From contig NC_083440.1 of the NCBI RefSeq assembly GCF_020745735.1, forward strand, positions 27,485,278 to 27,549,277: a stretch of DNA of 64,000 bases. The letters run 5' to 3'. The notes beneath the pieces are model-generated. The model was not told the DNA's origin and made no database searches. It worked only from the letters and a program-made list of their open reading frames with translations. Source of the DNA: Hemiscyllium ocellatum (lineage: Eukaryota). The position numbers and the translations under genes are program-made. The stretch's first letter is position 1; every line of letters begins with the position of its first letter. Positions 1 through 64,000 of the stretch are shown here, piece by piece.

Positions 1-269
1 AGGTAAGACAAATTTGTGTTTCAAAACCATGAAAATTATCAGAATTTCACAGCACAGAGAGAGCACATCTAATCCCGAACCACTGAGTAAACGCTCGGTA
101 TTAGTAAAACGTGGCCAAACTGACAGGCCCATCTCGTGTTTACTGCTTATCAATAACTCCCATGTCTTCATTATCATAACAAAGATGCAGGACAGGGTGA
201 TGCGTTGTGACTGAACGGTGTGGGAGGTCCTGGATGTTATCCTGAACCAAGGCTCCCTCTGGCTCTGTC

Positions 270-1740
270 CTAGCCCACCAATACTGGGATTTCCTGTGGC
301 CCACTTTATTACAATGAAAACACCAGGGCTTTTGATCTTCTCTGTCCCCCTCAAAGGTTTCTTTTTTACCCTGGGGTAAGGTCTCCCTGGGATCTACCCT
401 TCCCTTTCCACACCAGGATTTCTCTTTGTCCCAGTTTCTCTCCCTCCTGGACTGAAATCGATTCTGGAAGTCAATCCGTGTTTTATGGACCAGCCCATAC
501 CCATCAGCCCCTTCAGCTGCTAACCTGACTGTTTTAACCCTCTGTTCTGCCCCATGAGCTTACACGACATCCACACTGAGACTACCCTCAGCCTTTATCT
601 CCAGCCTTTTCAACTCACCTTCCTTTTTAAGTGTCAGGTTGTGAAGTTTAAGAGCTCTCTCTATTTCATTCTCTGCCCTCTCCCTTTTTCCCTTTCTTCT
701 GCTTTTAATTGTAAACCAAATCGTTTCATTTCTGCTGCCCTTTCCTGATCTCTCGCCTCTAACTGGAGCTGTTCCATTTGTAATTGAATCCTTGCCATCT
801 CTATAGATGCTGAGGGTTTCTCCAGCAATTGGAAATGCTGAGCTGCCGCTGGAATTCTCTCTCCTTTCCTCACAGAACCAGGCAATCCAAATTTCAGCTT
901 CTCCGCTCATTCCCGCAACTTTGTCTCACTCACCTTTTGCAAACCTTCTAACGTCACCGAATCCACATCCAGAAAACCTTTGGTGACTAAAAGAGCCATT
1001 ACTCTCCCAAGCTTAGTCCACCCAACCAAACCGACACCCGAAATATAGACACTAGCACCGACCACTCGCTGTTTAAAATCCAGGACGAGCCCCCACAATC
1101 TGTTATGGATGAGGCCAGACCACTCAAAACATTCTTAACCAGGAAGACCAGACCATAACTTTGCAATCTGTTTCAGTAAGTGTACAGTGAAAATTACCCG
1201 GAGGAAGTTAGTGAGGTTGACGACCAGGGTGTAGAACAGACAAAGATTTATTCACAAAATTACACATTGAAACACAAAATAAAGACCCCTGACAGAACTC
1301 AGTCGATCCAAACTAGACTTCATCATGTTGTTCCAAATACCCACAACCGTCCCAATAAGCAAAACTTTAAAACCCTTTAAAACCCAGTACAGAGGGAACA
1401 CATGTGGACAGGCTGAAGTTAGACAGAGAGGCAGAGTTTCCACACAGCTCCCTGTTGAATTCCCAACCAGTTCTCGACTGAACTGAACTGCTCAGCTAGA
1501 GAGCAGACCAATCCCCTTTCATTATACAGGTCACTCCTAGAACATGACCACTTGGCCTAAAGGCTCATCTGTTTCCATAGAAACAAAAGGCCTCTCCAAA
1601 CCCTTCCCATCTCTGTACCAAACCAGCCTGATCGGAGCCCGGCCTGGTATATTACCCCCTCTCCCTCTGAAATACATCCAGGGCAGAGTCTCCCTGAGCC
1701 AAGGGACAGCTTTGGATAAAGAGGGACTAGCTTTGTGCCA
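270..1740 (-). mobile_element. Truncated Gypsy-like LTR retrotransposon (5' LTR plus decayed gag), copy 1
   Basis: LTR-like block 1101-1740 (tgttatgg...tttgtgcca) with an adjacent tRNA-Pro-type PBS. Minus-strand gag-like peptides (MALLVTKGFLDVDSVTLEGLQKVS..., coiled-coil-like segment) and a decayed zinc knuckle (CFHCNKVGH). Confidence 0.75.
1079..1095 (-). promoter_or_regulatory. tRNA-Pro primer-binding site of the Gypsy-like element
   Basis: Minus strand reads TGGGGGCTCGTCCTGGA a few nt after the LTR end; the canonical PBS-Pro is TGGGGGCTCGTCCGGGAT. Confidence 0.75.
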
Positions 1741-1862
1741 CTAGCATGGACTTTGAGGGGCTGAGTGGCCTCCTTCTCTTGTCCCAGACTGTTCCAAATA
1801 GCTGTATCACCTCTGGAGGGTGTGGATTGGGAATTGATCCTGGCTGCTTTCCCCTGATACAG

Positions 1863-2192
1863 CTGCAATGGATAAAGTCGCTGACGTTGGAGGGACCGTG
1901 ACACTCCCGTGTCAGGTCGGGAATGTCACTATGTCCCAGGCCACTGTATACTGGCAAAAACGCCTGGAAAAGAAAGTCTTGTTCTATTGGAAGAATGGGA
2001 AAATGGATCCCAATTATCAGAATGAGAAATACCGGAACAGAAGTCGCATCTCCCACAGTGAATTCCAGAAGGGAATCCTGTCACTGATAATTTGGGATCT
2101 GCGTCTGAGTGATAGTGGAGTGTATGATTGTATCATCAAAACAGAACACCAAGGAACTCCTGAGCGATACACCATTACTCTGAAAGTTAACA
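1863..2192 (+). CDS. IgV-set exon of a B7-family (CD80/CD86-like) gene, copy 1
   Basis: 330-nt phase 1-1 exon bounded by gatacag| and |gtgagt. Ig hallmarks: LPC (B-strand Cys), VYWQK (Trp), YRNR, LSL.I.DLRLSDSGVYDC (F-strand Cys), ITLKV (G strand). The YWQK...KKVL segment resembles the CD80-type C strand. Positions 1-4 (ag|gt) are the donor of the preceding leader exon. Confidence 0.9.
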
Positions 2193-2244
2193 GTGAGTGC
2201 TGTCCTCATTCCTGTCCTTATACCCCAGCTCAGTTTGTGTCTGT

Positions 2245-3540
2245 CTACATCAGTTTGTCTGTGTGTACATCTGTGTGTGTACATCTGTGTGTGTGTACAT
2301 CTGTGTGTGTGCACATCTGTGTGTATGTATACATCTGTGTGTGTGTACATCTGTGTGTGTACATCTGTACGTGTACATCTGTGAGTGTGTGTATATATCT
2401 GCATGTGTGTCTGTGTGTGTACATCTGTGCGTGTACGTGTGTGTACATCTGTGTGTATGTTCATGGGTGTGTGTACATCTGTGTGTGTACATCTGTGTGT
2501 GTGTATGTACATCTGTATGTATGTACATCTGCATGTGTGTATATATCTGTGTGTCCATTTGTGTGTGAGTATGTGTGTTCATGTACATCTATGTGTGTAC
2601 ATCTGACTGTGTATGCACATCTGTATGAGTATACATCTGTGTGTGCATGTACATCTGTGTGAGCATACATCTGTGTGTGTACGTCTGTGTGTGTATGTAT
2701 ATCTGTGTGTATACATCTGTGTGTGTATACATCTGTGAGTGTGTGCACATCTGTGGGTGTCTGTGTACATCTTTGTGTGTGTACATCTGTGTGTGTGTAT
2801 ACATCTGTGTGTATACATCTGTGTATATACATCTGCATGTGTGTGTGTACATCTGTGCGTGTACTTATGTGTGTGTGTACATCTGTGTGTATGTACATGT
2901 CTGTGTGTATACATCTGTGTTTGCATATCTGTGTGTGTACATCAGTGTGTGAGTATGTGCGTGCATGTACATCTGTGTGTGTACATCTGTGTATGAGTGT
3001 GTGTATGTACATCTGTGTGCGTGCATGTATGTGGGCACATGTATGTACATCTGTGTCTGTGTACTTCTGTGTGTGCATACATCTGTGTGTGTACATCTGT
3101 GTGTATGCACATCTGTGTGTGTATACATTTGTGTGTGTATACATCTGTGTGTACTTCAGTGTGTGTGTATACATCTGTGTGTGTGTACATTTGTGTGTGA
3201 GTGTGTGTGTATGTACATCTGTGTGTGTACATCTGTGTGTGTATGTACATCTGTGTGCGTGCATATATGTGGGCACATGTTTGTGTGTGCATATATGTGT
3301 GTGTGCACATGTTTGTGTGAATGTGTGTGTGTGTGGTTTTGGACATCTGTGTTTGGACGTGTGTGTGCATAAATGCGTGTACATATGTGTGCATATGTGT
3401 ATGTGTGAGTACGTATCTGTGCATGTGTGCATACTTTCGTGTGTACTGTGTTAGTGAGCTCATGTCTGTGTGTGTGGTGTTGTGTGTGTGTGTATATCAG
3501 TTGTGTGTGTGCCACTGTGTGTGTACGTCTCTGTCTCAGT
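2245..3540. repeat. Compound (TG)n-TACATC microsatellite array
   Basis: Repeated tgtgtgtacatc-type units, intronic. Confidence 0.95.
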
Positions 3541-3696
3541 GTAAGAGAGAGAGTGTGTGTGTGTGTGTACGTCTCTGTCTCAGTGTAAGAGAGTGTGTGT
3601 GTGTGTCACTGTGTGTGTACATCTCTGTCTCAGTGTGAGAGTGTGTGTGTGTCACTATGTGTGTACGTCTCTGTCTCAATGTAAGAGAGTGTATGT

Positions 3697-4380
3697 GCGC
3701 CCACACCTCCACACTCACTTCCCTCCAAGGCCCCAAGGGATCCTTCCATATCCGCCACAAGTTCACCTGTACCTCCACACACATCATCTATTGCATCCGC
3801 TGCACCCGATGTGGCCTCCTCTATATTGGTGAGACAGGCCGCTTACTTGCGGAACGCTTCAGAGAACACCTCCGGGCCGCCCGAACCAACCAACCCAATC
3901 ACCCCGTGGCTCAACACTTTAACTCTCCCTCCCACTCCACCGAGGACATGCAGGTCCTTGGACTCCTCCACCGGCAGAACACAACTACACGACGGCTGGA
4001 GGAGGAGCGCCTCATCTTCCACCTGGGAACCCTCCAACCACAAGGTATGAATTCAGATTTCTCCAGTTTCCTCATTTCCCCTCCCCCCACCTTGTCTCAG
4101 TCGGTTCCCTCAACTCAGCACCGCCCTCCTAAACTGCAATCCTCTTCCTGACCTCTCCGCCCCCACCCCACTCCGGCCTATCACCCTCACCTTGACCTCC
4201 TTCCACCTATCCCACCTCCATCGCCCCTCCCCCTAGTCCCTCCTCCCTACCTTTTATCTTAGCCTGCTTGGCTCTCTCTCTCTCTTATTCCTGATGAAGG
4301 GCTTATGCTCGAAACGTCGAATTCTCTATTCCTGAGATGCTGCCTGGCCTGCTGTGCTTTGACCAGCAACACATTTGCAG
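3697..4380 (+). mobile_element. 5'-truncated Penelope-like retroelement (GIY-YIG endonuclease plus terminal repeat)
   Basis: Open frame to the stop at 4151 contains HIIYCIRCTRCGLLYIGETGRLLAERFREH (GIY-YIG with PLE-type Cys/His). The 3' region carries a hammerhead core. Confidence 0.9.
4287..4322 (+). ncRNA. Minimal type I hammerhead ribozyme motif in the PLE terminus
   Basis: ATTC-CTGATGA-A-GGGC-TTAT-GCTC-GAAA-C-GTC-GAAT. Stem I is ATTC/GAAT, stem II is GGGC/GCTC, stem III is loopless and palindromic (ACGT), and the cleavage triplet is GUC. Confidence 0.7.
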
Positions 4381-5179
4381 GTGTGTGTGTATGTCTCTGT
4401 CTCAGCGTAAGAGAGTGCGTGTGTGTGTCACTGTGTGTGTACATCTCTGTCTCAATGTAAGAGTGTGTGTGTGTGTGTCACTATGTGTGTACGTCTCTGT
4501 CTCAATGTAAGAGAGTGTGTGTGTGTATGTCTCTGTCTCAGTGTAAGAGAGTGTGTGTGTACGTCTGTCTCAGTGTAAGAGTGTGTGTGTGTGTACGTCT
4601 CTGTCTCAGTGTAAGAGTGTGTGTGTGTGTGTCACTGTGTGTGTCACTGTGTGTGTACGTCTCTGTTTCAGTGTAAGAGAGAGAGTGTGTGTGTGTGTGT
4701 GGGTGTGGCTCCCTTGTTATGTATCCTTGTCTCTTTATCCCCCTCACTCACGCTCACTACTCCTTCCCCTCTCTCTCTCTCTCTCTGCCTCGGACTCTCC
4801 CACTCTGTTAAAAGCTCTCTCTCTGACTCCCTCTTTCTGTATTTCTGCTGACTTATGTGTGACTCGATGTTTGTCTCTCCTCTTCTCTGTCTCTCTCTCC
4901 TTTCTCCCTTTCCATATCTGTATCCCTCTCTCGGCCTCTTGCTGTCTCTGTCTAACTGTCCCACCCTCTTTATTACACTCCATCTGGGTATTTATCTGTT
5001 CCTCTGAGTTACTCGCTCACTGGGTATTTCTCTCCCATTCTCTGCCACACTCCCTCTCTCTCTGATTCCATCTTTCAGCTTTGGCCATAACCTGCTTCTG
5101 TATCTCTCTCTCTCTCTCTCTGTCTCACACAAAGCCAGCCTCAAACTCTCTTGTCCTGCCTTTGATCTGTGTTTTCCAG

Positions 5180-5242
5180 ACCCTACAACTGTGGAACCAC
5201 GAACAGTGGAGACTAATGGGGCCACTCTGCAGAATCAAACAG
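5180..5242 (+). CDS. Putative Thr/Pro-rich stalk exon of the B7-like gene (copy 1 only)
   Basis: Acceptor gttttccag| and donor |gtaaga. 63 nt, phase 1-1, in frame with the IgV exon: NPTTVEPRTVETNGATLQNQT(G), with an N-Q-T sequon. Confidence 0.65.
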
Positions 5243-5424
5243 GTAAGATGTGGTGGAAATCTCACTCCAGGACCCAACAGTGACCCTGAAATGAAACCCA
5301 GTCCCCCACACAAACCCCCAGCACAACCACCAAGTGGCATAATGTAATCCCCCAAAATAAAGTGAACAACACCATTACCCCCGCACCCGAGTCTGAATGG
5401 AAAACTCAGGAACCACAACTGGGA

Positions 5425-6486
5425 GTCAGTACTGAGGGAGGGTCAGCACTGAGGGAGGGTCAGCACTGAGGGAGGGTCAGTGCTGAGGGAGGGTCAGTGC
5501 TGAGGAAGGGTCGGCACTGAGGGAGGGTCAGCGCTGAGGGAGGGTCAGTAGTAATGGAAGGTCAGCGCTGAGGGAGGGTCAGTACTAAGGGAGGGTCAGT
5601 ACTAAGGGAGGGTCAGCATTGAGGGAGGGTCAGCACTGAGGGAGGGTCAGTACTGAGGGAGGGTCAGTGCTGAGGGAGGGTCAGTGCCGAGGAAGGGTCA
5701 GTACTGAGGGAGTGTTAGTACTGAGGGAGGGTCAGTACTGTGGGAGGGTCAGCACTGAGGGAGTGCCGCACTGAGGGAGGGTCAGTACTGAGGGAGGGTC
5801 AGCACTGAGGGAGTGCCACACTGTGGGAGGGTCAGCGCTGAGGGAGGGTCAGTACTGAGGGAGTGTCAGTACTGAGGAAGGGTCAGTACTGAGGGAGTGT
5901 TAGTACTGAGGGAGGGTCAGTACTGTTGGAGGGTCAGCACTGAGGGAGTGCCGCACTGAGGGAGGGTCAGTACTGTGGGAGGGTCAGCACTGAGGGAGTG
6001 CCGCACTGTGGGAGGGTCAGCGCTGAGGGAGGGTCAGTACTGAGGGAGGGTCAGCACTGAGGGAGTGTTATTACTGAGGGAGGGTCAGTACTGTGTGGGG
6101 GTCAGCACTGAGGGAGGGTCAGCACTGAGGGAGTGACGCACTGCGGAAGGGTCAGTGCTGAGGGAGTGCCGCACTGAGGGAGGGTAAGTGCTGAGGGAGG
6201 GTCTGCATTGAGGGAGGGTCTGCACTGAGGATGGGTCAGTACTGAGGGAGGGTCAGCACTGAGGGAGGGTCAGTAATGAGGGAGGTTCAATGCTGTGGGA
6301 GGGTCGGTACTGAGGGAGGGTCAGTACTGTGGGGGTCAGCACTGAGTGAGTGCTGCACTGAGGGAGGGTCAGTACTGAGGGAGGGTCAGCACTGAGGGAG
6401 GGCCGCACTGAGGGAGGGTCAGTACTGAGGGAGGGTCTGCACTGAGGGAGGGTCAGTACTGAGGGTGTGTCAGTACTGAGGGATGG
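5425..6486. repeat. 17-bp minisatellite (cagtactgagggagggt), copy 1
   Basis: About 60 tandem units read directly. Confidence 0.95.
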
Positions 6487-7505: not shown

Positions 7506-8407
7506 TCAGACATCCACAGTCTGACGAATTCGAGCAAAGGGATATTTCAGCACCTCCTTCAGCTGCTCTCTGAACTTAGTCTGGGTCACGGCGTAAATGA
7601 TGGTGTTTGTGCAGCAACTCAGGAGTTGCAACATGAAGCCCCACTCCAGCACAAAATCATCGAGATCCATGAATTCATATCCCAGATCGAACAAACGGGT
7701 CCATGTGGAATACAGCATCAGTACTGACCATAACAGAATAAAATTGGCTGAGATAACAAACAGCAAAACAATTGATTTCCTTCGACTCTCCATTTCGGAG
7801 TCTTTGGTGTTCTTGTCCCTATTACAAGCCCGGAGTCTCCTGCGGGCTCTGCTGGTCACTAAAATGTATCTGACTGTCAAAATATTGAGCAGCAGAACCA
7901 AGACAAATGGGAGACATGGGGTTATAATGTGATGGAGGAACTCGATTGTCACCCAGAATAGCGATTCTAGTATTGCCAGAGAATAGTCACAAAACCACGG
8001 GAGGTTCAACAATTTATAATTTTCCGTGAACATAAAATACCAGAAAAGGTTCTTTAAACAGCTCACCACAGTCACTGCTCCGAGAATGAGAGATGCTGTT
8101 CTTGGAGTGCAGTATCTGTTTTTCACTTTCTGCCAACAAATGGCCACAAACCGATCAAAGGTAAAAGTGACGGTGAACCAGACAGAACAGTCTGTAGCTG
8201 CATAAAGCAGGACGGCGTGGATGTTACACACGGGGGTGGACTTCAAGAAGATAAAATGTTCCTTAAAAACAATGGGGATGTGTCTCAGTATCAGGTCAAG
8301 GATAATAACAAGGAGATCTGCCACTGCCATGGCAACCAGGTAACGGGTGATACATTTCGAGAGACCACACTTTCCTTGGGCCAAGATTGCAATCGCCAAT
8401 ATGTTAA
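7506..8407 (-). CDS. GPR139/GPR142-like class A orphan GPCR, exon 2 (end of TM1 to C-terminus), copy 1
   Basis: Acceptor cctcacag|TT AAC ATA. Intact frame: (V)NILAIAIL...LVAMAVADLL (TM2), FTFDRFVAIC (DRF variant of DRY), ECL2 LPWFC, SCCTNTIIYAVT (NPxxY-like). Confidence 0.93.
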
Positions 8408-9222: not shown

Positions 9223-9631
9223 CGGGGACCCCAACAATAGCCAGGATGGGATAGTAACCGGCCTGAATAACAACAAGCACGAAGAGGATTCGAAATCTCA
9301 AGGAGATCCAATCCACTGAAAGCCAATCCAAACTCTCAGAGAAACCCCTGTCCATTGCTACAACCTTCTGATCTCCTCTGGTCAGATTCTCACACCCTGT
9401 GGTAAGAAGGTTCCAATCCACAGCTCCCTGGTTCTGACCCAGTGTTCTAAGGTTCCAATCCATTGTTCCCAGGTTCCGTTTGTCTGTTGTAAGGTTACAA
9501 TCCATTGCCCCCAGGTTCCGTTTGACTGTTGTATGGTTCCAATCCATTGTCCCCAGGTTCCGTTTGACTGTTGTAAGGTTCCAATTCATTGTCCCCAGGT
9601 TCCGTTCGACTGTTGTAAGGTTCCAATCCAT
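9223..9631 (-). CDS. GPR139/142-like GPCR, exon 1 (repeat-rich N-terminus plus start of TM1), copy 1
   Basis: First in-frame ATG is at 9631, with an upstream in-frame TGA. It ends YYPILAIVGVP G|gtaagt, a phase 1 donor matching exon 2. Predicted protein is about 436 aa. Confidence 0.85.
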
Positions 9632-9680
9632 TGTGCCAAGGTTCCGTTTGTCTGTTGTAAGAAGGTTCCAACCCACTGCT
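9420..9680 (-). repeat. 42-bp coding tandem repeat (MDWNLTTVKRNLGT) in the GPCR N-terminus
   Basis: Four complete units plus degenerate flanking units; each complete unit has an N-x-T sequon. Confidence 0.9.
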
Positions 9681-13944: not shown

Positions 13945-15029
13945 TGTTATAAGTGATTTCTGTCTAGGCTTTCTGAATCTCCGGAGAATAGTTCCTGACA
14001 CTTGGCTAACTATTCTAACTCTAGGGATCTGATTCAGAACAACCGGGTCCTGCCTCCGAACTCTGCCAACCGTGGACTGTCCTTTAACCCTTGTATCAAG
14101 GGAGACTGTCCGCAAGGTTAAGTTCAAAAAGGCGAACTCCAAGTTGACTGGTATCAGTCCTTATCCCCACCGGCTATCACTTCTCCCGTGGCAAATCGAA
14201 ATACTGCGAGACACACACAAACGGAGCAACAGATGTTTATTCAATCTTCGAAGATTGGGCGAGTTTCCAAAAAAAGACTTCGGAAATCGCAACAGAAGAT
14301 TTTACAGCACTAATACTTATACATTATTTTTCCATTCAAATACAATGGTGATAATTTCATTGCTTTAAACATCTCACGCTATGGATCTTCTTACATTAAA
14401 AATCATTAATGACAATTCCATTGTTTAAAGCATTTCACGCTTTTCTCTGCCAAGTTCTTTAATTAAAATGTTATATTATTTTACAATTTCTGCTTTTTGG
14501 TATCTTCATGTTCTACTAGTTATAACATTTATTGATTTTTGTGTATGTCATGAAAAGAGCTTTCATTGTATTTTGCCCTCTGTGTCTAACTGAAGCATTC
14601 CTTGGTTTCTTGCCCAAGGTTACCATGTTCCTATCTTTACAGAGGTGACTTACAATTCATGCTTCTTTATGGCCTTAGTAAATTATTAGTCTTACAATTT
14701 CAACTTTTATTCATTAAATTTCTGTTTTAGTATAGAAATTACCCCACTTATACCAAGAGAGTGTGTGTGTGTGTGTGTGTGTGAATTGGGTGTGTGTGTG
14801 TGTAATATGTGTGTGGTGTGTGAATGTATATGTGTGTGTGTGTGAAGGTAGTGTGGGTCTAGTGTGTATATGTGTGTGGGTCTTAGTGTTCCTTTGTATG
14901 TGTGTGTGGGTCTAGTGTGTATCTGTGTGTGTGTGTATGCGCGTGAATTGGGTGTGTGTGTGTGTATATGTGTGAATAAAGAAATATGTGTGTGTGTGTG
15001 AAACTGCAGAAATTACATTAACCATATCA
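13945..15029 (-). repeat. ERV 3' LTR
   Basis: Plus strand tgttataag...accatatca. Minus-strand AATAAA at 14236-14241. About 3% diverged from the 5' LTR by eye. Confidence 0.93.
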
Positions 15030-15030
15030 A

Positions 15031-15045
15031 TTGCCCCGTCTTTTT
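15031..15045 (-). promoter_or_regulatory. ERV polypurine tract
   Basis: Minus strand reads AAAAAGACGGGGCAA directly before the 3' LTR start TGATATGG. Confidence 0.75.
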
Positions 15046-16950
15046 ATTCAGTCTGTAATTTTTGCAACATGATAATAGCTTGTCTATTCCAATCAGCTTC
15101 AGTATCGTTTGCATCTGCTTGTAGGTGAATGCCCACAACTGTATGCGGGTCACTCTTAATCAAAGTAGTCTCAATTAGGCGTGTAATTAGACCACGCAGA
15201 CATGGAATTATACAACAGCCCAAAGCAACTAAAATCCCGATAACCAACAGAAGTGTAATCACCACTGAGACCATCACCCCCTTCCATTTATCGAACCACC
15301 ACTCTAGCCAGCCAGTCCAATTAGTATTTACACATGAATTCTCAGCTATCTCATCAGCCAGTGCGTGGAGACCTTCCAGGGCACGGGTCACCGAGCCATC
15401 AGGGGCCGTATTGTTGGGAATAAAAGTACAACATTGAGAGCCTATCATGACACAAACGCTCCCCTTTTCAGCTAAGAGCATGTCCAAGGCCAGTCTATTT
15501 TCCCAAGCCATACGACTGGTGGCATCCAGTTATTCGGCCAAACCCTTTACTGCATCTCTAGTATGGTTAATAAACCGTGCTTGGTGATAATAAATGTAGT
15601 TTATCCAATCCACATTCTTATTAATAGTAACCCACCAGAATAGGGATGATTCAAAGCCTGCTGAAGTCTGGTTACGAGCTTTAAACTCATCAGGCACTCC
15701 CCTAGGGACCCCTATTGAATCAAGATAAATCCCTTTATCAAAAGAAGTGGATAGCAGTGATCTCTTATCTCTTCCTTTTTTCCCAACTAAATGTTCTCTT
15801 TCAAATGCCAGGGTGAATGGTATTGCCAATTGTACAATTGCACATATCCCCTTCCAATCAGGGGGCAGGGTGGGTCTCAGTAGTTTTCCTCCACAATACC
15901 ACCACAGATCCGCTCGGGGAACGTTTAAAGATGAGTAATTTCTTCCTTCCACTGCTTCAGTAACATTTTTAATCACTGAACACAATCTCAGCTCCCCCAA
16001 ATCAATAGATCCACCCTGTCTATAAACACACGATGTGTGATTCCCAACAGCGGCAGAAAACACAGAGGGAGCTTGCCTCTTATGTCCTTTTAAGGAAGAG
16101 AACATCAAAGACAAAGAGGCACAATTCGGATTTTTCCATGCAGTCTCATCTTGATATAGGGCTATCATACATTCCATGCCCTGTTTGTTTCGCTCCCACC
16201 CGAGCGGAAAGGGAACTACCTGAGACACTGCCCTACCGGAGGCACATGCATAGCAATTGCTTTTGTTCAGGCTTTTTACAGTATACTTAACCCATTCAAT
16301 CCAGGCATTTGTTTATCCATATCCTGTTTCTATTTCAAGAGTCTGTCTCAGGTCTTTAACCTCTATAATCTGCAGTGACTTTGGATCAGTGTAAGGGGTT
16401 AAAGGTTGCAGTTTAGAATCAAGGAATCCCAAAGGCTGTCCCCGTCCGACGCCAATTCAAAAATAGCAGCCCACAAAACGCTTCCCATACACTGTCATCT
16501 CTATCTTTAAATTTTTACTAAGGAGTTGAGACCCATTTTTATGGGGAAATGAGTCTTCAGAGGAAGCATTTTTAATGGTGAGATATATATAGGATGACAC
16601 TTCCTGTCAAAACAGTTTAGGGCTGGGCTAAAGGAGGCTCTATGGATAGTGATGCTAGGCGGTGGCTTTTGCGGTTCGGTAGGGTGTGAAGAAATATCTT
16701 GGAGGAAAGATATTCCCTTTGAAACTCTACATCTGGGCATTCTACTTAGGCTGCAAGCATCAATTTTTATAACTTGTGGAAATTCCGAAACAGAAATCAT
16801 TAACACAACATCTGAAAAAGATATATGAGCAAAACTCAGAAGTAACAGGAATAGCAGCATAATTCTGACTAGTGCTAAGAACTTAAACAATATATCAAAG
16901 CACAAAACAAGATTAACATACAATTCTGAAGAAACAGTCCCCGCACGCAC
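15044..16950 (-). pseudogene. env: ERV env (gamma-type), disrupted
   Basis: SU has NCYAC (CxxC); furin site RDKR; ISD-like ENRLALDMLLAEKGSVC; CX6CC (CVMIGSQCC); a TM helix. In-frame TAA at 16313-16315 and 15530-15532. A signal-peptide-like N-terminus (IMLLFLLLLSFAHISFS) lies in 16507-16950 and probably joins by a frameshift. Confidence 0.88.
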
Positions 16951-16999
16951 GTCGCCATAGTATAGTCAGTTAATCAAAGTCTGTTCAGTCTGAATTATA

Positions 17000-17270
17000 G
17001 TGGGTCACGTGTTGATTCGGCTGTCCAGACTCCTTTCTTAACTGGAGAGGTGACTGGCCATTTGCCAGCTTTTCTCTGCCGTTCAATGGTGAGGTGTACT
17101 AGGAACGGGCCGTCCCACACAAGTTCGAGAGTTAACTGTTGTCAATGTTTGATCAAAACCCCTTCACCGGGTTCAATAGTGTGCACAGCGAAATCCAGAG
17201 GTGGTGTCTGAGTCAGGAATCCCTGGTGGAGTAAACGAGAAACAGCGAAGCCCAGAGTCTCAACATATTT
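17000..17270 (-). pseudogene. pol: ERV integrase C-terminal remnant
   Basis: HTIEPGEGVLIKH*QQLTLELVWDGPFLVHLT matches the PG-x-V-x-IK...W-x-GP-x-x-V motif. No integrase core or RNase H is recognisable. Confidence 0.65.
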
Positions 17271-17805
17271 ACAGATACACATATCTCATGACTCAAGCTC
17301 TAGGTGATAAACACTCAAACATTCATGCACTAACGAACAGATGACTTTCAGCCAGAAACTCAACAAAATGTAATAGCTTCCGTTCTCTCTCTCTCTCTCT
17401 CTCTCATACGGTGTTGGTCTCTCTGTCTATGTCTGCCTGTCACTGTATTCTGTGTCTGGGAACTGTTCAGCGTCGGTTGTCAGTAACATCAATGCAGCCC
17501 TACGCGCCGTATAGCCCCCACGAAGCGCAATACAGTCTACTTACTGTCTCAACGTCCTGAAACTCACTCTCAAGTTACCCATATTAATTCGCATCTACCC
17601 TCAGAGTTTCTGTTCCCCCCTGCCTTATCAGCAGCCTATTTCTTTGTACATCTGTTCCGGAGCCACTGCTCCCCTGCCTCACTGGCAGCCTATCTCTCTG
17701 TGTAACTGGGTACATTTGCCCCTGGAGGCCCTGCTCCCCTGCCTCATTTTCCTGAAGGTGGATACCACCCCTCATGTCGTGTGAGTTTGGAATTGTTCTA
17801 ACTTA

Positions 17806-18836
17806 TTACCACCTTGCACTCAATCTCATGAATGGTCCTCCTTTCCATAAGAAGTCAGCCGGATTTGAACATGCACCCACCACTATCTTAAGGTCCTCTC
17901 TATCTAAGAGCACTGCCTCATATTTCAGGATTCGGGAGTCTGTGAGCCATCGTCCCGCTTTTTGATTCAGAATAGTGCGGACTTGGTGAGGAGTAACCCC
18001 AGACAGTGGTGCTCCAAACGTCAGTTTCTGGCTTTCTTCCACTAGCTTAGCAGTGGCTGCTACTGCTTGTACACATTCGGGCCAACCCCGTGAAACGGGG
18101 TCTAGGATTCTGGAGAGGAAAGCTACAGGTTTTCTATGTCCACCCCATTCCTGAGTCAAGACCCCAAAAGCCGTCCCGTGCTTGGCGTTAACAAAGAGTC
18201 GAAAATCTTTATTAAAATCTGGCAAGCTCAAAACCGGTGCTGTAACTAATTTTTTTTTAAAGTTTCAATCAGCATCTTTCCTTCTGGGTTCCATTTAACC
18301 CTGTCCGGAGCCTCCTCTGTTAGCTGCAGGTATAGCCTTTTTGTAAGAGTAGCATAATTATATATCCAGAGTCTGCAATAACCTAGCAAACCCAGGAACT
18401 TTCGGAGTTCCCTCTTAATTCGGGGTAGTCCTAATTCTACAATTCCCTTTACTCTTTCAGGGCTTATTCTCTTCTGCCCTTGACTGATCAAATGCTCTAA
18501 ATATCTTACTTCCCGTTCCACATACTGTAGTTTGTTCTGACTAACTCGCAATCCCTTCACTGCAAGGTAGTTTAATAAATCATTGGTTCCCTGCTGTGTG
18601 TCAGTTTGGGTGGGACCGGACAACAGGAGGTCGTCCACATACTGAATTAACTTTAAAGTTGGTCTTAAAGTCAAGCCCTCAAGAACTTGTTCTAGGATCT
18701 GTCCAAACAAGTTTGGTGACTCGGTAAAACCTTCAGCTAAGACAGTCCACCTATACTGCTGTTTTCTCCCAGTGTCAGAGTCCTCCTTAAGTTCTAATAA
18801 AATCATATCATGAGAAAAAAAAATAACGTTGAGCAT
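17806..18836 (-). pseudogene. pol: ERV reverse transcriptase and connection domain, disrupted
   Basis: YRWTVLAEGFTESP, LIQYVDDLLL (YVDD), FLGLLGYCRLW, then AFGVLTQ...PVAFLSR after a break. Protease not recognisable. Confidence 0.92.
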
Positions 18837-19199
18837 TCATAAAATTACAATCAAAAATAGCACACTGAATCAAATGACAAACAACAAGTTTCACACATAA
18901 AACCATTAACAAACAGATGAATTCAAGCCAGAGCACAAAGTGTTAAACTGCTTGTTAGCTGAGAAGCCTTTTTTTAAAAAAATCCATACACAAACACAAA
19001 TTCTCACATCCACAGAGACCTTTTTTTACAATCAAATTTACACACACAAAGACACACATAAATCTTCACCAACACAAAATTCCTATCGGGGGCCGGCCCA
19101 CTAAGACATAAATATTTAGATTTAGATAACCACCCTATTTATCCGACTCCTTTTGTCTTTCATACAGTCCTCCCTTACTACTGCTACCATTATCTTAAC

Positions 19200-21567: not shown

Positions 21568-21587
21568 ATCACGGACACGAGCCCCCA
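21568..21587 (-). promoter_or_regulatory. ERV primer-binding site, tRNA-Pro type
   Basis: Minus strand reads TGGGGGCTCGTGTCCGTGAT, 4 nt after the 5' LTR end. Confidence 0.8.
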
Positions 21588-21591
21588 AATT

Positions 21592-44954: not shown

Positions 44955-46850
44955 ACAATGGGAAGGCTACAAACACAAACAGAGGATAACAAGGAGAGAA
45001 ATAAGGAAGGAGAGGATCAACTATGAAGGTAGGCTAGCCAGTAATATTAGGAATGATAGTAAAAGTTTCTTTCTATATATAAGAAACAAACAACAGGCAA
45101 AAGTAGACATTTGGCCATTTCAAACTGATGCTGGAAGCCTAGTGATGGGAGATAAGGAAAGAGCTGGAGAATTTAATACGCACTTTGCGACTGTCTTCAC
45201 AGTGGAAGACATGAGTAATATCCCAACAATTAAAGGGATTCAGGGGGCCGAGTTGAGTATTGTTGCCATTATAAAAGAGAAAGTGCTAGAAAAGCTAAAA
45301 GGTCTTAAAATTGACAAATCTCCTGGCCCCGATGGGATACATCCTAGAGTTCTGAGGGAGGTGGCTGAGGAAATAGCAGTGGCATTGGTTGAGATCTTTC
45401 AAAAGTCACTGGAGTCAGGGAAACTCCTGGATGATTGGAGGATCGCTGTTGTAACCCTCTTGTTCAAGAAAGGATCAAGACAAAAGATGGAAAATTATAG
45501 GCCAATCTTGGTTGTTGGTAAAATTCTAGAATCCATCATTAAGGATGAGGTTTCTAAATTCTTGGAAGAACAAGTCAACATGGATTTAGTAAGGGGAGGT
45601 CATGCCTGACAAAACTGTTGGAATTCTTTGAAGAGGTGATAAATAGATTAGACTAGGGAAACCCAGTGGATGTGGTCCATTTAGACTTCCAAAAGGCCTT
45701 TGATAAGGTGCCACACGGGAGGCTGCTGAGCAAGGTGAGGGCCCATGGTGTTCCAGGTGAGCTACTGGGATGGACTGAGGATTGGCTGTCTGACAGAAGG
45801 CAGAGAGTTGGGATAAAAGGTTCTTTTTCAGAATGGCAGCCGGTGACAAGCGGTGTCCCGCAGGGTTCAGTGTTGGGGCCGCAGCTGTTCACATTATATA
45901 TTAATGATCTGGATGAAGGGACTGGGGGCATTCTAGCGAAGTTTGCCGATGATACGAAGTTAGGTGGACAGGCAGGTAGTACTGAGGAGGTGGGGAGGCT
46001 GCAGAAGGATCTAGTCAGTTTGGGAGAGTGGTCCAGGAAATGGCTGATGGAATTCAACGTGAGCAAATGCGAGGTCTTGCACTTTGGAAAAAAGAATAAA
46101 AGCATCGACTACTTTCTAAATGGTGAGAAAATTAGTAAAGCCAAAGTACCAAGGGATCTGGGAGTGCAAGTCGAGGATTCTCTAAAGGTAAACATGCAGG
46201 TTGAGTCTGTGATTAAGAAAGCGAATGCAATGTTGTCATTTATCTCAAGAGGGTTGGAATATAAAAGCACCGTTGTGCTACTGAGACTTTATCAAGCTCT
46301 AGTTAGGCCCCATTTGGAGTACTGTGTCCAGTTTTGGTCCCCACACCTCAGGAAGGACATACTGGCACTGGAGCGTGTCCAGCGGAGATTCACACGGATG
46401 ATCTCTGGAATGGTAGGTCTAACATACGGGGAACAGCTGAGGATCCTGGGATTGTATTCATTGGAGTTTAGAAGATTAAGGGGAGATCTAATAGAAACTT
46501 ACAAGATAATACATGGCTTGGAAAGGGTGGACACTAGGAAATAGTTTCCGTTCGGCGGGGAGACTAGGACCCGTGGACACAGCCTTAGAATTAGAGGGGG
46601 TCAATTCAGAACAGAAATGCGGAGACATTTCTTCAGCCAGAGAGTGGTGGGCCTGTGGAATTCATTGCCACAGAGTGCAGTGGAGGCCGGGACGCTAAAT
46701 GTCTTCAAGGCAGAGATTGATAAATTCTTGATGTCACAAGGAATTAACGGCTACGGGGAACATGCAGGTAAGTGGAGTTGAAAGGCCCATCAGCCATGAT
46801 TGAATGGCGAAGTGGACTCGTTGGGCTGAATGGCCTTACTTCCACTCTTA
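44955..46850 (+). mobile_element. 5'-truncated CR1 LINE, ORF2 RT with internal deletion
   Basis: KSPGPDGIHPR, DFQKAFDKVPH, PQGSVLGP, FADD and LEYCVQFWSP, plus a 3' UTR. Confidence 0.95.
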
Positions 46851-49660: not shown

Positions 49661-49664
49661 TTAG

Positions 49665-49736
49665 GGATTAATTTAAATAGGACAAAAGAAAAGACATTCC
49701 TGATTATAATGCTACTAAGTTTTCCACCCATATCAG
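49665..49736 (+). CDS. Leader (signal peptide) exon of the B7-like gene, copy 2
   Basis: Strong acceptor (ctctcctctttag|) and donor (|gtaaga). 72 nt, phase 1-1: xINLNRTKEKTFLIIMLLSFPPIS(A), splicing in frame to the IgV exon (AMDKV...). Confidence 0.8.
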
Positions 49737-51608: not shown

Positions 51609-51938
51609 CTGCAATGGATAAAGTCGCTGACGTTGGAGGGACCGTGACACTCCCGTGTCAGGTCGGGAATGTCACTATGTCCCAGGCCACTGTATACTGG
51701 CAAAAACGCCTGGAAAAGAAAGTCTTGTTCTATTGGAAGAATGGGAGAATGGATCCCAATTATCAGAACGAGGAATACCGGAACAGAAGTCGCATCTCCC
51801 ACAGTGAATTCCAGAAGGGAAACCTGTCACTGATAATTTGGGATCTGCGTCTGAGTGATAGTGGAGTGTATGACTGTATTATCAAAACAGAACACCAAGG
51901 AACTCCTGACCAATACAGCATTACTCTGAAAGTTAACA
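51609..51938 (+). CDS. IgV-set exon of the B7-family (CD80/CD86-like) gene, copy 2
   Basis: Same splice sites as copy 1, intact frame, 6 aa differences. Confidence 0.9.
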
Positions 51939-55763: not shown

Positions 55764-56665
55764 TCAGACATCCACAGTCTGACGAATTCGAGCAAAGGGA
55801 TATTTCAGCACCTCCTTCAGCTGCTCTCTGAACTTAGTCTGGGTCACGGCGTAAATGATGGTGTTTGTGCAGCAACTCAGGAGTTGCAACATGAAGCCCC
55901 ACTCCAGCACAAAATCATCGAGATCCATGAATTCATATCCCAGATCGGACAAACGGGTCCATATGGAATACAGCATCAGTACTGACCATAACAGAATAAA
56001 ATTGGCTGAGATAACAAACAGCAAAACAATTGATTTCCTTCGACTCTCCATTTCGGAGTCTTTGGTGTTCTTGTCCCTATTACAAGCCCGGAGTCTCCTG
56101 CGGGCTCTGCTGGTCACTAAAATGTATCTGACTGTCAAAATATTGAGCAGCAGAACTAAGACAAATGGGAGACATGGGGTTATAATGTGATGGAGGAACT
56201 CGATTGTCACCCAGAATAGCGATTCTAGTATTGCCAGAGAATAGTCACAAAACCACGGGAGGTTCCACAATATATAATTTTCCCAGAACATAAAATACCA
56301 GAAAAGGTTCTTTAAACAGCTCACCACAGTCACTGCTCCGAGAATGAGAGATGCTGTTCTTGGAGTGCAATATCTGTTTTTCACTTTCTGCCAACAAATG
56401 GCCACAAACCGATCAAAGGTTAAAGTGACGGTGAACCAGACAGAACAGTCTGTAGCTGCATAAAGCAGGACGGCGTGGATGTTACACAAGGGGGTGGACT
56501 TCAAGAAGATAAAATGTTCCTCAAAAACAATGGGGATGTGTCTCAGTATCAGGTCAAGGATAATAACAAGGAGATCTGCCACTGCCATGGCAACCAGGTA
56601 ACGGGTGATACATTTCGAGAGACCACACTTTCCTTGGGCCAAGATTGCAATCGCCAATATGTTAA
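55764..56665 (-). CDS. GPR139/142-like GPCR, exon 2, copy 2
   Basis: Intact 902-nt exon, same acceptor, 8 aa differences from copy 1. Confidence 0.93.
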
Positions 56666-57480: not shown

Positions 57481-57790
57481 CGGGGACCCCAACAATAGCC
57501 AGGATGGGATAGTAACCGGCCTGAATAACAACTAGCACATCCACGGTGCTCCAAGACCATGAAAGCCAATCCAGACTCTCAGAGAAACCCCTGTCCATTG
57601 CTCCAACCTTCTGATCACCTCTGGTCAGATTCTCACACCCTGTGGTAAGAAGGTTCCAATCCACTGCTCCCTGGTTCTGACCCAGTGTTCTAAGGTTCCA
57701 ATCCATTGTCCCCAGGTTCCGTTTGACTGTTGTAAGGTTCCAATCCATTGTCCCCAGGTTCCGTTTGACTGTTGTAAGGTTCCAATCCAT
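57481..57790 (-). CDS. GPR139/142-like GPCR, exon 1, copy 2
   Basis: ATG at 57790, fewer 42-bp repeats, donor G|gtaggt in phase 1. Confidence 0.85.
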
Positions 57791-61129: not shown

Positions 61130-62013
61130 TAGTCTCAACTGCACCCTGTTACCATAGAGACAGAACCCAACTGCATCCCGTTACCATAGAGACAGAAACC
61201 AGCCGCACCCTGTTACCATAGAGACAGAAACCAGACGCACCCTGTTACCACAGAGACAAAACCAATCTCCACCCTGTTACCATAGAGATAGAACCCAATT
61301 GCACCTTGTTACCATAGAGACAGAAACCAATCTCCACCCTGTTACCATAGAGAGAGAACCCAACCGCACCCTGTTACCATAGAGACAGAACCCAACCGCA
61401 CCCTGTTACTAGAGAGACAGAACCCGACTACACCCCGTTACCATAGAGACAGAACCCAACTGCGTCCTGTTACCATAGAGACAGAAGCCAACAGCACCCT
61501 GTTACCATAGAGACAGAACCTGACTACACCCAGTTACCATAGAGACCACTTATCACCTTGTACCCCACCAGCCTTCAAATGCGAAGAATAATCCTCCGCC
61601 ATTTTCGCCAACTCCAACACGACGCTATCCCTAAACACATCTTCCCTTCCCTCCCCCTGTCTGCATTCCGCAGAGATCGTTCCTTCTGGGTCAACCTAGT
61701 CCACTCCTCCATCACACCCAATACCTGTCCCATCACACACGGCACCTTCCCATCACACCTAACACCTCTCCCATCACCCCTAACACCTCTTCCATCACAC
61801 CTAACACCTCTCCCATCACACCTAACACCTTTCCCATCAAACCTAACACCTCTCCCATCACACCTAACACCTCTCCCATCACACCTAACACCTCTCCCAT
61901 CACACACAGCACCTCTCCCATCACACCTAACACCTCTCCCATCACACCTAACACCTCTCCCATCACACACGGCACCTCTCCCATCACACCTAACACCTCT
62001 CCCATCACACACG
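61130..62013. repeat. 32-bp minisatellite, PLE fragment and 21-bp minisatellite, copy 2
   Basis: Paralogous to 13030-13944. Confidence 0.9.
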
Positions 62014-63125
62014 TGTTATAAGTGATTTCCGTCTAGGCTTTCTGAATCTCCGGAGAATAGTTCCTGACACTTGGCTAACTAATCTAACTCTAGGGATCTG
62101 ATTCAGAACAACCGGGTCCTGCCTCCGAACTCTGCCAACCGCGGACTGTCCTTTAACCCTTGTATCAAGGGAGACTGTCCGCAAGATTAAGTTCAAAAAG
62201 GCGAACTCCAAGTTGACTGGTATCAGTCCTTATCCCCACCGGCTATCACTTCTCCCGTGGCAAATCGAAATACTGCGAGACACACACAAACGGAGTAACA
62301 GATGTTTATTCAATCTTCGAAGATTGGGCGAGTTTCCAAAAAAAAGACTTCGGAAATCGCAACGGAAGATTTTACAGCACTAATACTTATACATTATTTT
62401 TCCATTCAAATACATTGGTGATAATTTCATTGGTTTAAACATCTCACGCTATGGATTTTCTTGCATTAAAAATCATTAATGACAATTCCATTGGTTAAAG
62501 CATTTCACGCTTTTCTCTGCCAATTTCTTTAATTAAAATGTTATATTATTTTACAATTTCTGCTATTTGGCACATTCCCTTATCTTCATGTTCTACTAGT
62601 TATAACATTTATTGATTTTTGTGTATGTCATGAAAAGAGCTTTCATTGCATTTTGCCCTCTGTGTCTAACTGAAGCATTCCTTGGTTTCTTGCCCAAGGT
62701 TACCATGTTCCTACCTTTACAGAGGTGACTTACAGTTCATGCTTCTTTATGGCCTTAGTAAATTATTAGTCTTACAATTTCAACTTTTATTCATTAAATT
62801 TCTGTTTTAGTATAGAAATTACCCCACTTATACCAAGAGTGTGTGTGTGTGTGTGTGTGTGTGAATTGGGTGTGTGTGTGTGTGTAATATGTGTGTGGTG
62901 TGTGAATGTATATGTGTGTGTGTATGAAGGTAGTGTGGGTCTAGTGTGTATATGTGTGTGGGTCTTAGTGTGTCTTTGTATGTGTGTGTGGGTCTAGTGT
63001 GTATCTGTGTGTGTGTGTGTGTGTGTGTGTATGCGCGTGAATTGGGTGTGTGTGTGTGTGTATATGTGTGAATAAAGAAATATGTGTGTGTGTGTGAAAC
63101 TGCAGAAATTACATTAACCATATCA
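62014..63125 (-). mobile_element. Solo ERV LTR at the site matching the copy-1 provirus
   Basis: Same termini and same flanks (cacacg| and |agatcaggg) as the provirus; no internal sequence. Confidence 0.95.
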
Positions 63126-63388
63126 AGATCAGGGATGTTTATAAGATTTCCTTGTGGTTCATCTGTGTTCTGATAACGGTTGGTAATAAATTGTTAATTT
63201 GTGTTTAAGTTATAAACTTGGTGTCCATGATCTGTTTTTTTTTGGAAATTCCGGTGAGGAACAATTGAACGGCTGAATCCAGTGATGCGGAGGCTGATTG
63301 GGTTTGGCTTGTCTGCCCGGTGTCAGAAGTGGACTCTGTCGGGTAATGCCTGGATCTTCGGAGACTGGAACACAAGGCACTGTTGGAA

Positions 63389-63589
63389 GTCCAACGACAC
63401 CAGGTTATAGTCCAACAGGTTCATTTGGAATCAGAAACTTTCTCAGCACTCCTCCTTTGTCAGATGAAGTCAAGAAAGGGGGCAGTGCTCCAAAAGCTAG
63501 TGCTTCCGACTAAACCCATGTGACTATAACCTGGTGTCATGTGACTTCTGACCTTGTCCACCCCAGTCCAACTCTGGCACCTCCACATC
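63389..63589. mobile_element. PLE-type terminal palindrome, copy 2
   Basis: Arms at 63396-63412 and 63522-63538. Confidence 0.6.
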
Positions 63590-64000
63590 ATGACAAACAC
63601 TGTAATCATGGTCGCAGAAACTATGGACACGGTAACTATCGACACGATAATTACGGACACGGTAACTATGGACACAGTAACTATGGACACAGTAACTATG
63701 GACACGGTAACAATGGGCACAGTAATTACGGACACGATAACTATGAACGCGATAACTATGGACATGGTAACTACGGACATGATAACTATGGACACGATAA
63801 CTATGGACACGGTAACTACGGACATGATAACTATGGACACGATAATTATGGACACAGCAACTATGGACATGATAATTCTGGACATGGTGACTATGATCAT
63901 GGTGACTATGGACACGGTAATTATGGATACGGTAACTATGGACATGGTAACTATGGACACGGTAATTAAGGACACAGAAACAATGGAGAGGGTAACTATG
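63590..64000. repeat. Start of the 15-bp satellite, copy 2
   Basis: Same monomer; runs off the window end. Confidence 0.95.

What the first reader, a model, noticed from the sequence alone, without database searches (positions are those of the whole stretch)
1..64000. Tandemly amplified two-gene cassette: CD80/86-like IgV gene facing an antisense GPR139-like receptor
Seen: each ~49.7-kb unit has an intact B7-type IgV exon on + and, 4-6 kb downstream, an intact two-exon GPCR on -, in convergent orientation. Both genes have kept their frames and splice sites in both copies despite heavy repeat turnover. Known: mammalian CD80/CD86 are single-copy costimulatory ligands of CD28/CTLA-4 and GPR139 is single copy, while sharks are reported to carry many GPR139-like paralogues. 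Inference: this may be a co-amplified immune ligand and receptor module that I do not recognise as described. Co-amplification alone does not show a functional link.
Basis: partly seen in the sequence, partly recalled or inferred. Interest (0 to 1): 0.7.

Follow-up and report, generated by a model that had tools for sequence, protein, structure and literature searches.

The report
Duplicated shark receptor gene with broken neighbour
A ~50-kb stretch of shark DNA has been copied in tandem, carrying an intact orphan receptor gene and a truncated B7-like immune gene that lies beside it; nothing links the two genes in function, so this is ordinary gene-family turnover.

Summary
The sequence observation holds. 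Window 1-15030 recurs at 49735-63126 with about 2.7% substitutions. Each copy has an intact V-set Ig exon on + and an intact two-exon GPR139-like receptor on -, in convergent orientation. No assembly gap touches an exon or intron of either gene.

The "immune ligand plus receptor module" reading is not supported.
- **The Ig gene is truncated.** Its full-length paralogue reads leader-V-stalk-TM-tail. Neither copy here has a TM exon, and copy 2 has also lost the stalk exon. There is no IgC, and the nearest solved relative is PD-L1, not CD80/86.
- **Intact frames prove little.** Exons diverge no less than nearby non-coding DNA, so these copies are simply young.
- **The adjacency is old but the genes decay separately.** The zebra shark locus is collinear, yet there the Ig gene is intact and the receptor is a pseudogene with stops and frameshifts.
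- **The closest receptor paralogues lack a V-set neighbour** in all three cases tested.

The unit also carries a defective ERV (solo LTR in copy 2) and an 18-kb 15-bp satellite. The scan has met this receptor family, and similar passenger cassettes, many times in this genome.

The parts
1..2 (+). Last two bases of the leader exon of Ig copy 1. The rest lies left of the window. The donor GTAAGA follows at 3-8.
   Evidence: The window start aligns to 49735 of copy 2, inside the leader exon and donor.
1863..2192 (+). V-set Ig exon, copy 1. Phase-1 acceptor (tacag|CT) and phase-1 donor (A|GTGAGT).
   Evidence: Pfam V-set E 1.6e-13. 89% identical to P0121. Sequence read.
2256..3334 (.). TG-rich 14-16-bp microsatellite in the Ig intron. 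Copy 2 has it at 52002-53126, and it sits at the same relative place in zebra shark.
   Evidence: TRF. L001 27410-33978.
3540..5375 (.). Segment present in copy 1 only. It contains the stalk exon, so its absence from copy 2 is a deletion.
   Evidence: Self-alignment breakpoints 3539/53331 and 5376/53338. The stalk exon is ancestral, being present in P0121 and in L001.
5180..5242 (+). Stalk exon of Ig copy 1 (21 aa, 90% identical to P0121 residues 120-140). Donor G|GTAAGA. An AATAAA lies 114 bp downstream, at 5356.
   Evidence: tblastn, sequence, polyA motif.
5425..6483 (.). 17-bp satellite GTCAGTACTGAGGGAGG. Copy 2 has it at 53387-54741. A related array occupies the same place in zebra shark.
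   Evidence: TRF. L001 34524-35545.
7506..8407 (-). GPCR copy 1, exon 2 (end of TM1 to C-terminus, with stop).
   Evidence: Pfam 7tm_1 E 4e-19. 2349 relatives, all named 'probable GPR139' in sharks. Acceptor read.
9223..9631 (-). GPCR copy 1, exon 1 (136 aa plus 1 nt). It encodes an N-terminus of 14-aa repeats carrying N-x-T sequons, then most of TM1.
9407..9661 (-). 42-bp minisatellite that encodes the 14-aa N-terminal repeats of the GPCR. Copy 2 has it at 57650-57862, with fewer units.
   Evidence: TRF. Translation.
13945..15030 (.). LTR of an endogenous retrovirus, copy 1.
   Evidence: 95.8% identical to 21592-22396.
15031..21591 (-). Internal part of a defective endogenous retrovirus, with ORFs in fragments. 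It is absent from copy 2.
   Evidence: Pfam TLV_coat env at 15047-15511, RNase H at 17809-18231, RT at 18249-18836. Self-alignment.
21592..22766 (.). Second LTR of the ERV, copy 1, interrupted by two N runs.
23248..41662 (.). 18.4-kb satellite with a 15-bp unit (about 1228 copies).
   Evidence: TRF.
45666..46541 (+). Reverse-transcriptase fragment of a non-LTR retroelement.
   Evidence: Pfam RVT_1 E 1.5e-21.
49709..49736 (+). Leader exon of Ig copy 2 (MLLSFPPIS plus 1 nt, donor GTAAGA).
51609..51938 (+). V-set Ig exon, copy 2.
   Evidence: Pfam V-set E 2.4e-14. Splice sites identical to copy 1.
55764..56665 (-). GPCR copy 2, exon 2.
57481..57790 (-). GPCR copy 2, exon 1 (103 aa plus 1 nt). It has fewer N-terminal repeats than copy 1 and an in-frame 15-nt indel.
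62014..63126 (.). Solo LTR in copy 2, at the site where copy 1 has the full ERV.
   Evidence: It aligns to both LTRs of copy 1, and the flanks on both sides are conserved.
63619..64000 (.). Start of the 15-bp satellite of copy 2.
   Evidence: TRF.

Best explanation
This is a young tandem segmental duplication of a unit of about 50 kb, probably in the epaulette shark. It most likely arose by unequal crossing-over in a repeat-rich region. Each unit holds an 18-kb satellite, several minisatellites and an ERV.

Each unit carries one intact member of the very large shark-specific 'GPR139-like' orphan receptor family. It also carries the 5' remnant of a small single-V B7-like membrane-protein gene: leader, V, and sometimes stalk, with the transmembrane and tail exons missing.

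The two genes were copied together only because they are neighbours. That neighbourhood predates the split between epaulette shark and zebra shark. They decay independently: the receptor is dead and the Ig gene intact in zebra shark, while here the receptor is intact and the Ig gene truncated.

Shown: the duplication, the gene models, the missing Ig exons, the collinearity with zebra shark, and the ERV and solo LTR.
Inferred: unequal crossing-over as the mechanism, the passenger status of the Ig remnant, and that the receptor rather than the Ig remnant is the working cargo.
For: - Collinear duplicate blocks with 2.7% mean and 0-8.7% mosaic divergence.
- GPCR intact in both copies with canonical splice sites. 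It belongs to a family with 2349 hits, all from sharks.
- Ig exons are limited to leader, V and stalk. No TM exon was found by tblastn with three full-length relatives, and no hydrophobic stretch is present.
- Copy 2 has further lost the stalk exon through a 1.8-kb deletion.
- Zebra shark locus L001 runs V exon, TG repeat, stalk, satellite, TM exon, then GPR139-like pseudogenes on the minus strand with stops and frameshifts. It is collinear with the window, including the GPCR 3' flank 6997-7508, which does not match the paralogue loci.
- Copy 1 has a full ERV and copy 2 a solo LTR at the same site, so the ERV predates the duplication.
- Three close GPCR paralogues have no V-set neighbour.
- Unchecked notes from this scan report similar cassettes in the same genome, where the same GPCR family was copied with dead MHC-I or TCR V pieces.
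Against: - The GPCR may therefore be an unexpressed young duplicate, and the copy number could be partly an assembly effect.
- The V exons keep open frames and splice sites. A read-through from the stalk exon would give a short secreted V-only protein with an AATAAA 114 bp downstream, so a working truncated form is not excluded.
- Between the copies, dN/dS has no power (11 and 9 differences).
- The conserved adjacency across two shark families could be read as weak evidence for linkage.
Confidence: 0.72

Rival explanations
1. A functional two-gene module. The B7-like V protein, perhaps secreted, and the GPR139-like receptor are co-regulated or interact, and they were amplified together under selection.
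For: - The same head-to-tail convergent arrangement is found at the zebra shark orthologous locus.
- Both V exon and GPCR are open in both copies.
Against: - Reciprocal decay: the GPCR is a pseudogene in zebra shark where the Ig gene is intact, and the Ig gene is truncated here.
- Copy 2 lost another Ig exon after the duplication.
- No GPCR is called next to the full-length paralogue P0121 or within the 91-kb bamboo shark locus.
- Close GPCR paralogues lack V-set neighbours.
- No known class A GPCR takes a B7-type Ig domain as ligand (my own knowledge).
Confidence: 0.04
2. An assembly artefact. The two 'copies' are alleles or mis-scaffolded haplotypes of a single locus placed in tandem.
For: - There are six N runs in 64 kb.
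- The region is dominated by satellites that are hard to assemble.
- Depth could not be checked.
Against: - The copies differ by an ERV versus a solo LTR, a 1.8-kb deletion, different minisatellite lengths, and 2.7% substitutions reaching 8.7% locally. This is far more than I expect for shark alleles (my own knowledge of low shark heterozygosity).
- Unchecked notes place further copies in the windows before and after this one.
Confidence: 0.1
3. Both genes in these units are non-functional relics. The GPCR frames are open only because the duplicates are too young to have been hit.
For: - GPCR exon 2 differs by only 11 nt, and dN/dS is about 1.3.
- Neither product is in the protein collection, so the public annotation does not appear to call them.
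- No canonical polyA signal lies within 1 kb downstream of the GPCR stop.
Against: - Both GPCR copies keep a start codon, donor, acceptor, all seven helices and the family motifs. Exon 1 changed by whole repeat units and an in-frame 15-nt indel only.
- Seven of eight replacements sit in outer loops or outer helix ends, which is not the pattern of random decay.
Confidence: 0.15

Closest known systems
Shark-expanded 'probable G-protein coupled receptor 139' genes (automatic RefSeq names; for example Stegostoma tigrinum P0007, Heterodontus francisci P0003)
   Same: - Two-exon structure with a phase-1 intron in TM1.
- 64-72% identity over exon 2.
- The same motifs.
- The same 14-aa N-terminal repeat module in part of the family.
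   Different: These two copies are not in the protein collection. They sit in a 50-kb tandem unit together with an Ig remnant.
Human GPR139 (PDB 7VUG)
   Same: Best solved-structure match. Class A rhodopsin fold.
   Different: Only E 7e-7 and 32 bits, so it is a distant relative and not an orthologue. GPR139 is single copy in mammals (my own knowledge).
Single-V B7-like genes of carpet sharks: P0121 'PD-L1-like' (Hemiscyllium ocellatum), XP_072420659 (Chiloscyllium punctatum), XP_059498855 'MOG-like' (Stegostoma tigrinum)
   Same: - V exon 89%, 75-79% and 52-55% identical respectively.
- The same leader and stalk exons and the same intron phases.
   Different: Those proteins have a transmembrane segment and a short tail. 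The window copies lack those exons, and copy 2 also lacks the stalk.
B7 family ligands (PD-L1, B7-H3/CD276, CD80, CD86) and MOG/butyrophilins
   Same: V-set domain with the canonical Cys-Trp-Cys core. Best PDB matches are PD-L1 (E 1e-9), MOG, CD276, BTN2A1 and CD80 (E 5e-6).
   Different: There is no IgC domain in the window or in the full-length relatives (184-268 aa). CD86 is not among the best 60 matches listed. True shark PD-L1 is described separately (PMC12151841; title and abstract seen, paper not read).
Birth-and-death tandem arrays of vertebrate chemoreceptor genes (OR, TAAR, V2R clusters)
   Same: Tandem duplication, mosaic divergence suggesting unequal crossing-over or gene conversion, and replacements concentrated on the outward-facing parts.
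   Different: The ligand and site of expression of this family are unknown. The unit is unusually large and mostly satellite.

Membership tests
B7 family costimulatory ligands (CD80/CD86 type) | N-terminal V-set Ig domain related to B7 V domains | tested here: met
   Pfam V-set E about 1e-13. PDB matches: PD-L1 1e-9, CD276 4e-7, CD80 5e-6. It is nearest to PD-L1, not to CD80/86.
B7 family costimulatory ligands (CD80/CD86 type) | Membrane-proximal IgC domain following the IgV | tested here: not met
   No second Ig exon in the window. Full-length relatives P0121 (184 aa), P0125 and P0129 have only one Ig domain.
B7 family costimulatory ligands (CD80/CD86 type) | Transmembrane anchor | tested here: not met
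   It is present in P0121, P0125 and P0129 but has no counterpart in either window copy.
B7 family costimulatory ligands (CD80/CD86 type) | Binding to CD28/CTLA-4 | not testable with these tools
   This needs a binding assay.
Shark single-V B7-like lineage (P0121 / XP_072420659 / XP_059498855) | Leader-V-stalk exon order with phase-1 introns, and high V identity | tested here: met
   Collinear with the zebra shark gene.
Shark single-V B7-like lineage (P0121 / XP_072420659 / XP_059498855) | Complete gene with TM and tail exons | tested here: not met
   The interval that holds these exons is 7.3 kb in zebra shark (L001 35545-42822) and only about 0.5 kb here (6484-6996).
Shark-expanded GPR139-like receptors | Class A 7TM domain with high identity to family members | tested here: met
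   7tm_1 E 1e-19. 64-72% identity to 120 listed members.
Shark-expanded GPR139-like receptors | Two coding exons split in TM1 (…GVP | VN…), intact frame | tested here: met
   The same split is seen in L002 and L003.
GPR139 proper (orthologue of human GPR139) | Close sequence relationship to GPR139 | tested here: not met
   GPR139 is the best PDB hit, but only at E 7e-7 and 32 bits, close to CCK receptors at 2e-6.
Tandem segmental duplication | Collinear direct repeat of the whole unit, including non-coding DNA and shared insertions | tested here: met
   The two copies share the ERV insertion site.
Tandem segmental duplication | Both copies present in the real genome at normal depth | not testable with these tools

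The most novel reading that the evidence does not exclude
The truncated V-only gene is not dead. It makes a secreted B7-like V domain (leader-V-stalk, ending at the polyA signal just after the stalk exon) that acts with, or on, the neighbouring receptor, whose N-terminus is a glycosylated repeat. On this reading the pair is amplified as a working ligand-receptor unit. It would be a link between an Ig-superfamily ligand and a class A GPCR that I know of no precedent for.
Probability: 0.03. Interest if true: 0.8.

Novelty: new member of a known kind. Interest (0 to 1): 0.25.

Why it matters
As proposed, an amplified immune ligand-receptor cassette would have been a new kind of immune module. The evidence instead shows routine tandem duplication in a receptor family that sharks have multiplied enormously, with a broken Ig gene carried along.

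Three useful points remain.
- It is another documented case of how this large receptor family, apparently undescribed in the papers searched, grows: in large satellite-rich tandem units that drag fragments of immune genes with them.
- The contrast with zebra shark shows the two neighbours are kept or lost independently. That warns against reading function into the recurring 'immune gene plus GPR139-like' cassettes in this genome.
- Part of the family carries a variable-number, glycosylation-rich N-terminal repeat, which may be relevant to what these receptors sense.

Tried and rejected
- **TM exon search.** Three searches found nothing: tblastn with P0121 and P0122 (word size 2), then PAM30 with their TM and tail parts alone, then P0125 and P0129. 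A hydropathy scan of all + frames between the Ig exons and the GPCR printed nothing.
- **dN/dS between copies.** Too few differences to be informative.
- **DNA of related loci.** DNA of the P0121 locus and the Chiloscyllium loci was not available because the files are too large; only gene lists were returned. P0122 and P0124 were not on record as gene products.
- **Other ORFs.** Pfam on 20 further ORFs of the unit found only ERV and retroelement domains and no zinc finger. The unit therefore differs from the surroundings of P0121.
- **RNA genes.** Rfam and tRNA scans found nothing.
- **Literature.** No paper links GPR139 with sharks or cartilaginous fishes.
- The large representative-protein search was not run, because no claim here rests on absence of relatives.


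Full report
**1. What is in the window**

A k-mer and BLAST self-comparison shows a direct duplication. Blocks 1-3539, 5425-9619, 9491-11712, 11895-12255, 12409-13414 and 13640-15030 align in the same order to 49735-63126. In addition, 21592-22396 and 22767-23636 align to 62014-62820 and 63117-64000.

Outside the satellites, substitution divergence is 245/9225 = 2.7%. It varies from 0 to 8.7% in 300-bp bins. That mosaic fits exchange among members of an array.

Relative to copy 2, copy 1 carries two extra segments, 3540-5375 and 15031-21591. Between the copies lie an 18.4-kb satellite with a 15-bp unit (23248-41662) and about 8 kb with a retroelement RT fragment. The leader-to-leader distance is 49,734 bp, which includes estimated gap lengths.

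None of the six N runs falls within or between exons of either gene. For four of them, sequence on both sides aligns in order to the other copy. I did not look up or fill any gap letters.

**2. The receptor gene**

The 297-aa ORFs at 7506-8399 and 55764-56657 (minus strand) are rhodopsin-type 7TM domains (Pfam 7tm_1, E about 1e-19). They are 97% identical.

The acceptor (cacag|TT) lies at 8407 and 56665. Homologues located exon 1 at 9631-9223 and 57790-57481, with donors G|GTAAGT and G|GTAGGT. The products are 436 and 403 aa.

The word-based protein search returned 2349 relatives. All 120 listed come from sharks, and nearly all are named 'probable GPR139', at 64-72% identity. Among solved structures human GPR139 is the top hit, but only at E 7e-7. 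This is therefore the shark-specific expansion and not GPR139 itself. The scan has already met this family many times in this genome (unchecked notes). I found no paper on it.

**3. The Ig gene**

The V exon (1863-2192 and 51609-51938) is a good V-set domain with conserved splice sites. Its best solved relatives are PD-L1 (E 1e-9), MOG, CD276, BTN2A1 and then CD80 (E 5e-6). 'B7/butyrophilin-like' is fair; 'CD80/86-like' is not the best label.

Only four database relatives were found:
- P0121, 'PD-L1-like' (Hemiscyllium ocellatum), 184 aa, 89% identical.
- Chiloscyllium punctatum XP_072420659.
- A C. plagiosum fragment.
- Stegostoma tigrinum XP_059498855, 'MOG-like'.

These proteins read leader-V-stalk-TM-short tail and have no IgC domain.

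In the window I find the following:
- Copy 2: leader at 49709-49736 and the V exon.
- Copy 1: the leader ends at base 2, then the V exon and a stalk exon at 5180-5242.

The stalk exon lies in the 1.8-kb segment that copy 2 has lost. No TM or tail exon exists anywhere in the 64 kb, and no hydrophobic stretch lies between the Ig exons and the receptor. Both Ig genes are therefore truncated, and copy 2 has decayed further since the duplication.

**4. Is intactness evidence of selection?**

No. GPCR exon 2 differs at 11 of 897 nt and the V exon at 9 of 327 nt. That is no less than the neighbouring non-coding bins. With so few changes, open frames are expected by chance.

One pattern is not random. 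In GPCR exon 2, 9 nucleotide changes are non-synonymous and 2 are synonymous. Seven of the 8 replacements fall in ECL1, ECL2, ECL3 or the outer helix ends, placed by class A landmark residues. Exon 1, the extracellular N-terminus, is the most divergent block at 8.7%, with an in-frame indel and a different repeat number. This hints at diversification of the outward-facing side, or at patchy gene conversion. It is post hoc and based on one pair.

**5. Is the pairing meaningful?**

The zebra shark gene for XP_059498855 came with DNA (L001). L001 is collinear with the window:

| Feature | L001 (zebra shark) | Window |
|---|---|---|
| V exon and TG repeat | 27118-28863 | 1938-3664 |
| Stalk exon and the GTCAGTGCTGAGGGAG-type satellite | 33971-35544 | 4868-6483 |
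| TM exon | 39305-39424 | none |
| GPR139-like sequence on the window's GPCR strand | 43325-44086 | 7130-7934 |
| GPR139-like sequence on the window's GPCR strand | 47926-48327 | 8040-8442 |

The GPCR 3' flank (6997-7508) matches only L001 and not the loci of closer intact paralogues. This marks a positional orthologue. In zebra shark, however, these receptor sequences are pseudogenes with stops and frameshifts, split by a satellite, and no gene is called there.

The adjacency therefore predates the split of the two shark families, but the fates are reciprocal: Ig intact and GPCR dead there, GPCR intact and Ig truncated here.

Other loci point the same way.
- The only annotated full-length Ig paralogue in the epaulette shark has a zinc-finger gene upstream and no receptor called within 10 kb.
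- The bamboo shark orthologue spans 71 kb with no other called gene in 91 kb.
- Three of three close receptor paralogues have no V-set neighbour, by annotation and, for two of them, by tblastn on the DNA.

Unchecked notes from this scan report the same receptor family co-duplicated with dead MHC-I fragments and with TCR V segments elsewhere in this genome. That fits a passenger model.

**6. Other cargo**

Region 15031-21591 (minus strand) is a defective endogenous retrovirus. It has env (TLV_coat), RNase H and RT domains in broken ORFs and LTRs at 13945-15030 and 21592 to about 22700. Copy 2 has a single LTR at the same site (62014-63126), with both flanks conserved. The virus therefore integrated before the duplication, and copy 2 later recombined to a solo LTR. 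LTR-LTR substitution divergence is about 2.9%, similar to the 2.7% between units. I only described this element.

**7. Limits**

An assembly effect cannot be excluded formally. The structural differences between the copies, and notes of further copies in the adjacent windows, argue against it.

The species assignment (epaulette shark) rests on the best hit and on earlier notes.

**8. Verdict**

This is a tandem segmental duplication that multiplies a member of the shark GPR139-like receptor family together with the truncated remnant of its long-standing neighbour, a single-V B7-like gene. Interest is low to moderate.

Noticed in passing
window 9407-9661 and 57650-57862 (minus strand); also P0077, P0081, P0073, P0101, P0076, P0007: The receptor's extracellular N-terminus is built from a 14-aa unit (about M-G/D-R-N-L-R/G-T-I/M-D-W-N-V/L-T-T), each with an N-x-T glycosylation sequon, encoded by a 42-bp coding minisatellite. 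Copy 1 carries more repeat units than copy 2 (136 versus 103 aa in exon 1; five versus three N-x-S/T sequons). Among the 120 listed homologues, from several shark orders, N-terminal lengths tend to step by 14 aa (21, 35, 49, 63, 85, 99). At least 15 of them carry two or more units. Earlier notes describe family members with almost no N-terminus.
   Followed up: partly
window 7509-8405 vs 55767-56663 (minus strand): Between the two young receptor copies there are 9 non-synonymous and 2 synonymous changes. Seven of the 8 replacements lie in ECL1, ECL2 (three within seven residues) and ECL3 or the outer helix ends. This may be diversifying selection or a micro-conversion tract.
   Followed up: partly
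window 13945-22766 and 62014-63126: Copy 1 holds a defective gamma-type ERV (env, RNase H and RT fragments) with two LTRs. Copy 2 holds a solo LTR at the same site. The integration therefore predates the duplication, and LTR-LTR recombination followed it.
   Followed up: yes
window 23248-41662 and 63619-64000: An 18.4-kb satellite with a 15-bp unit (ACACGGTAACTATGG, about 1228 copies) gives ORFs of thousands of codons on both strands. It makes up more than a third of each unit. Another note in this scan covers its (GHGNY)n reading frame.
   Followed up: no
L001 27410-33978, 34524-35545 vs window 2256-3334, 5425-6483: The intronic microsatellite and satellite arrays of the Ig gene occupy the same relative positions in zebra shark and in this window. 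The repeat arrays themselves are long-lived features of the locus.
   Followed up: partly
window 5243-5361: If the stalk-exon donor is not used, the frame runs 13 codons to a stop, and an AATAAA lies at 5356. A secreted leader-V-stalk product is therefore conceivable for copy 1. This is untested.
   Followed up: no
Chiloscyllium punctatum locus of P0125 (no DNA available): The bamboo shark orthologue of the Ig gene is annotated as a 71-kb gene for a 241-aa protein. This suggests huge satellite-filled introns, or a model that spans several tandem units.
   Followed up: no
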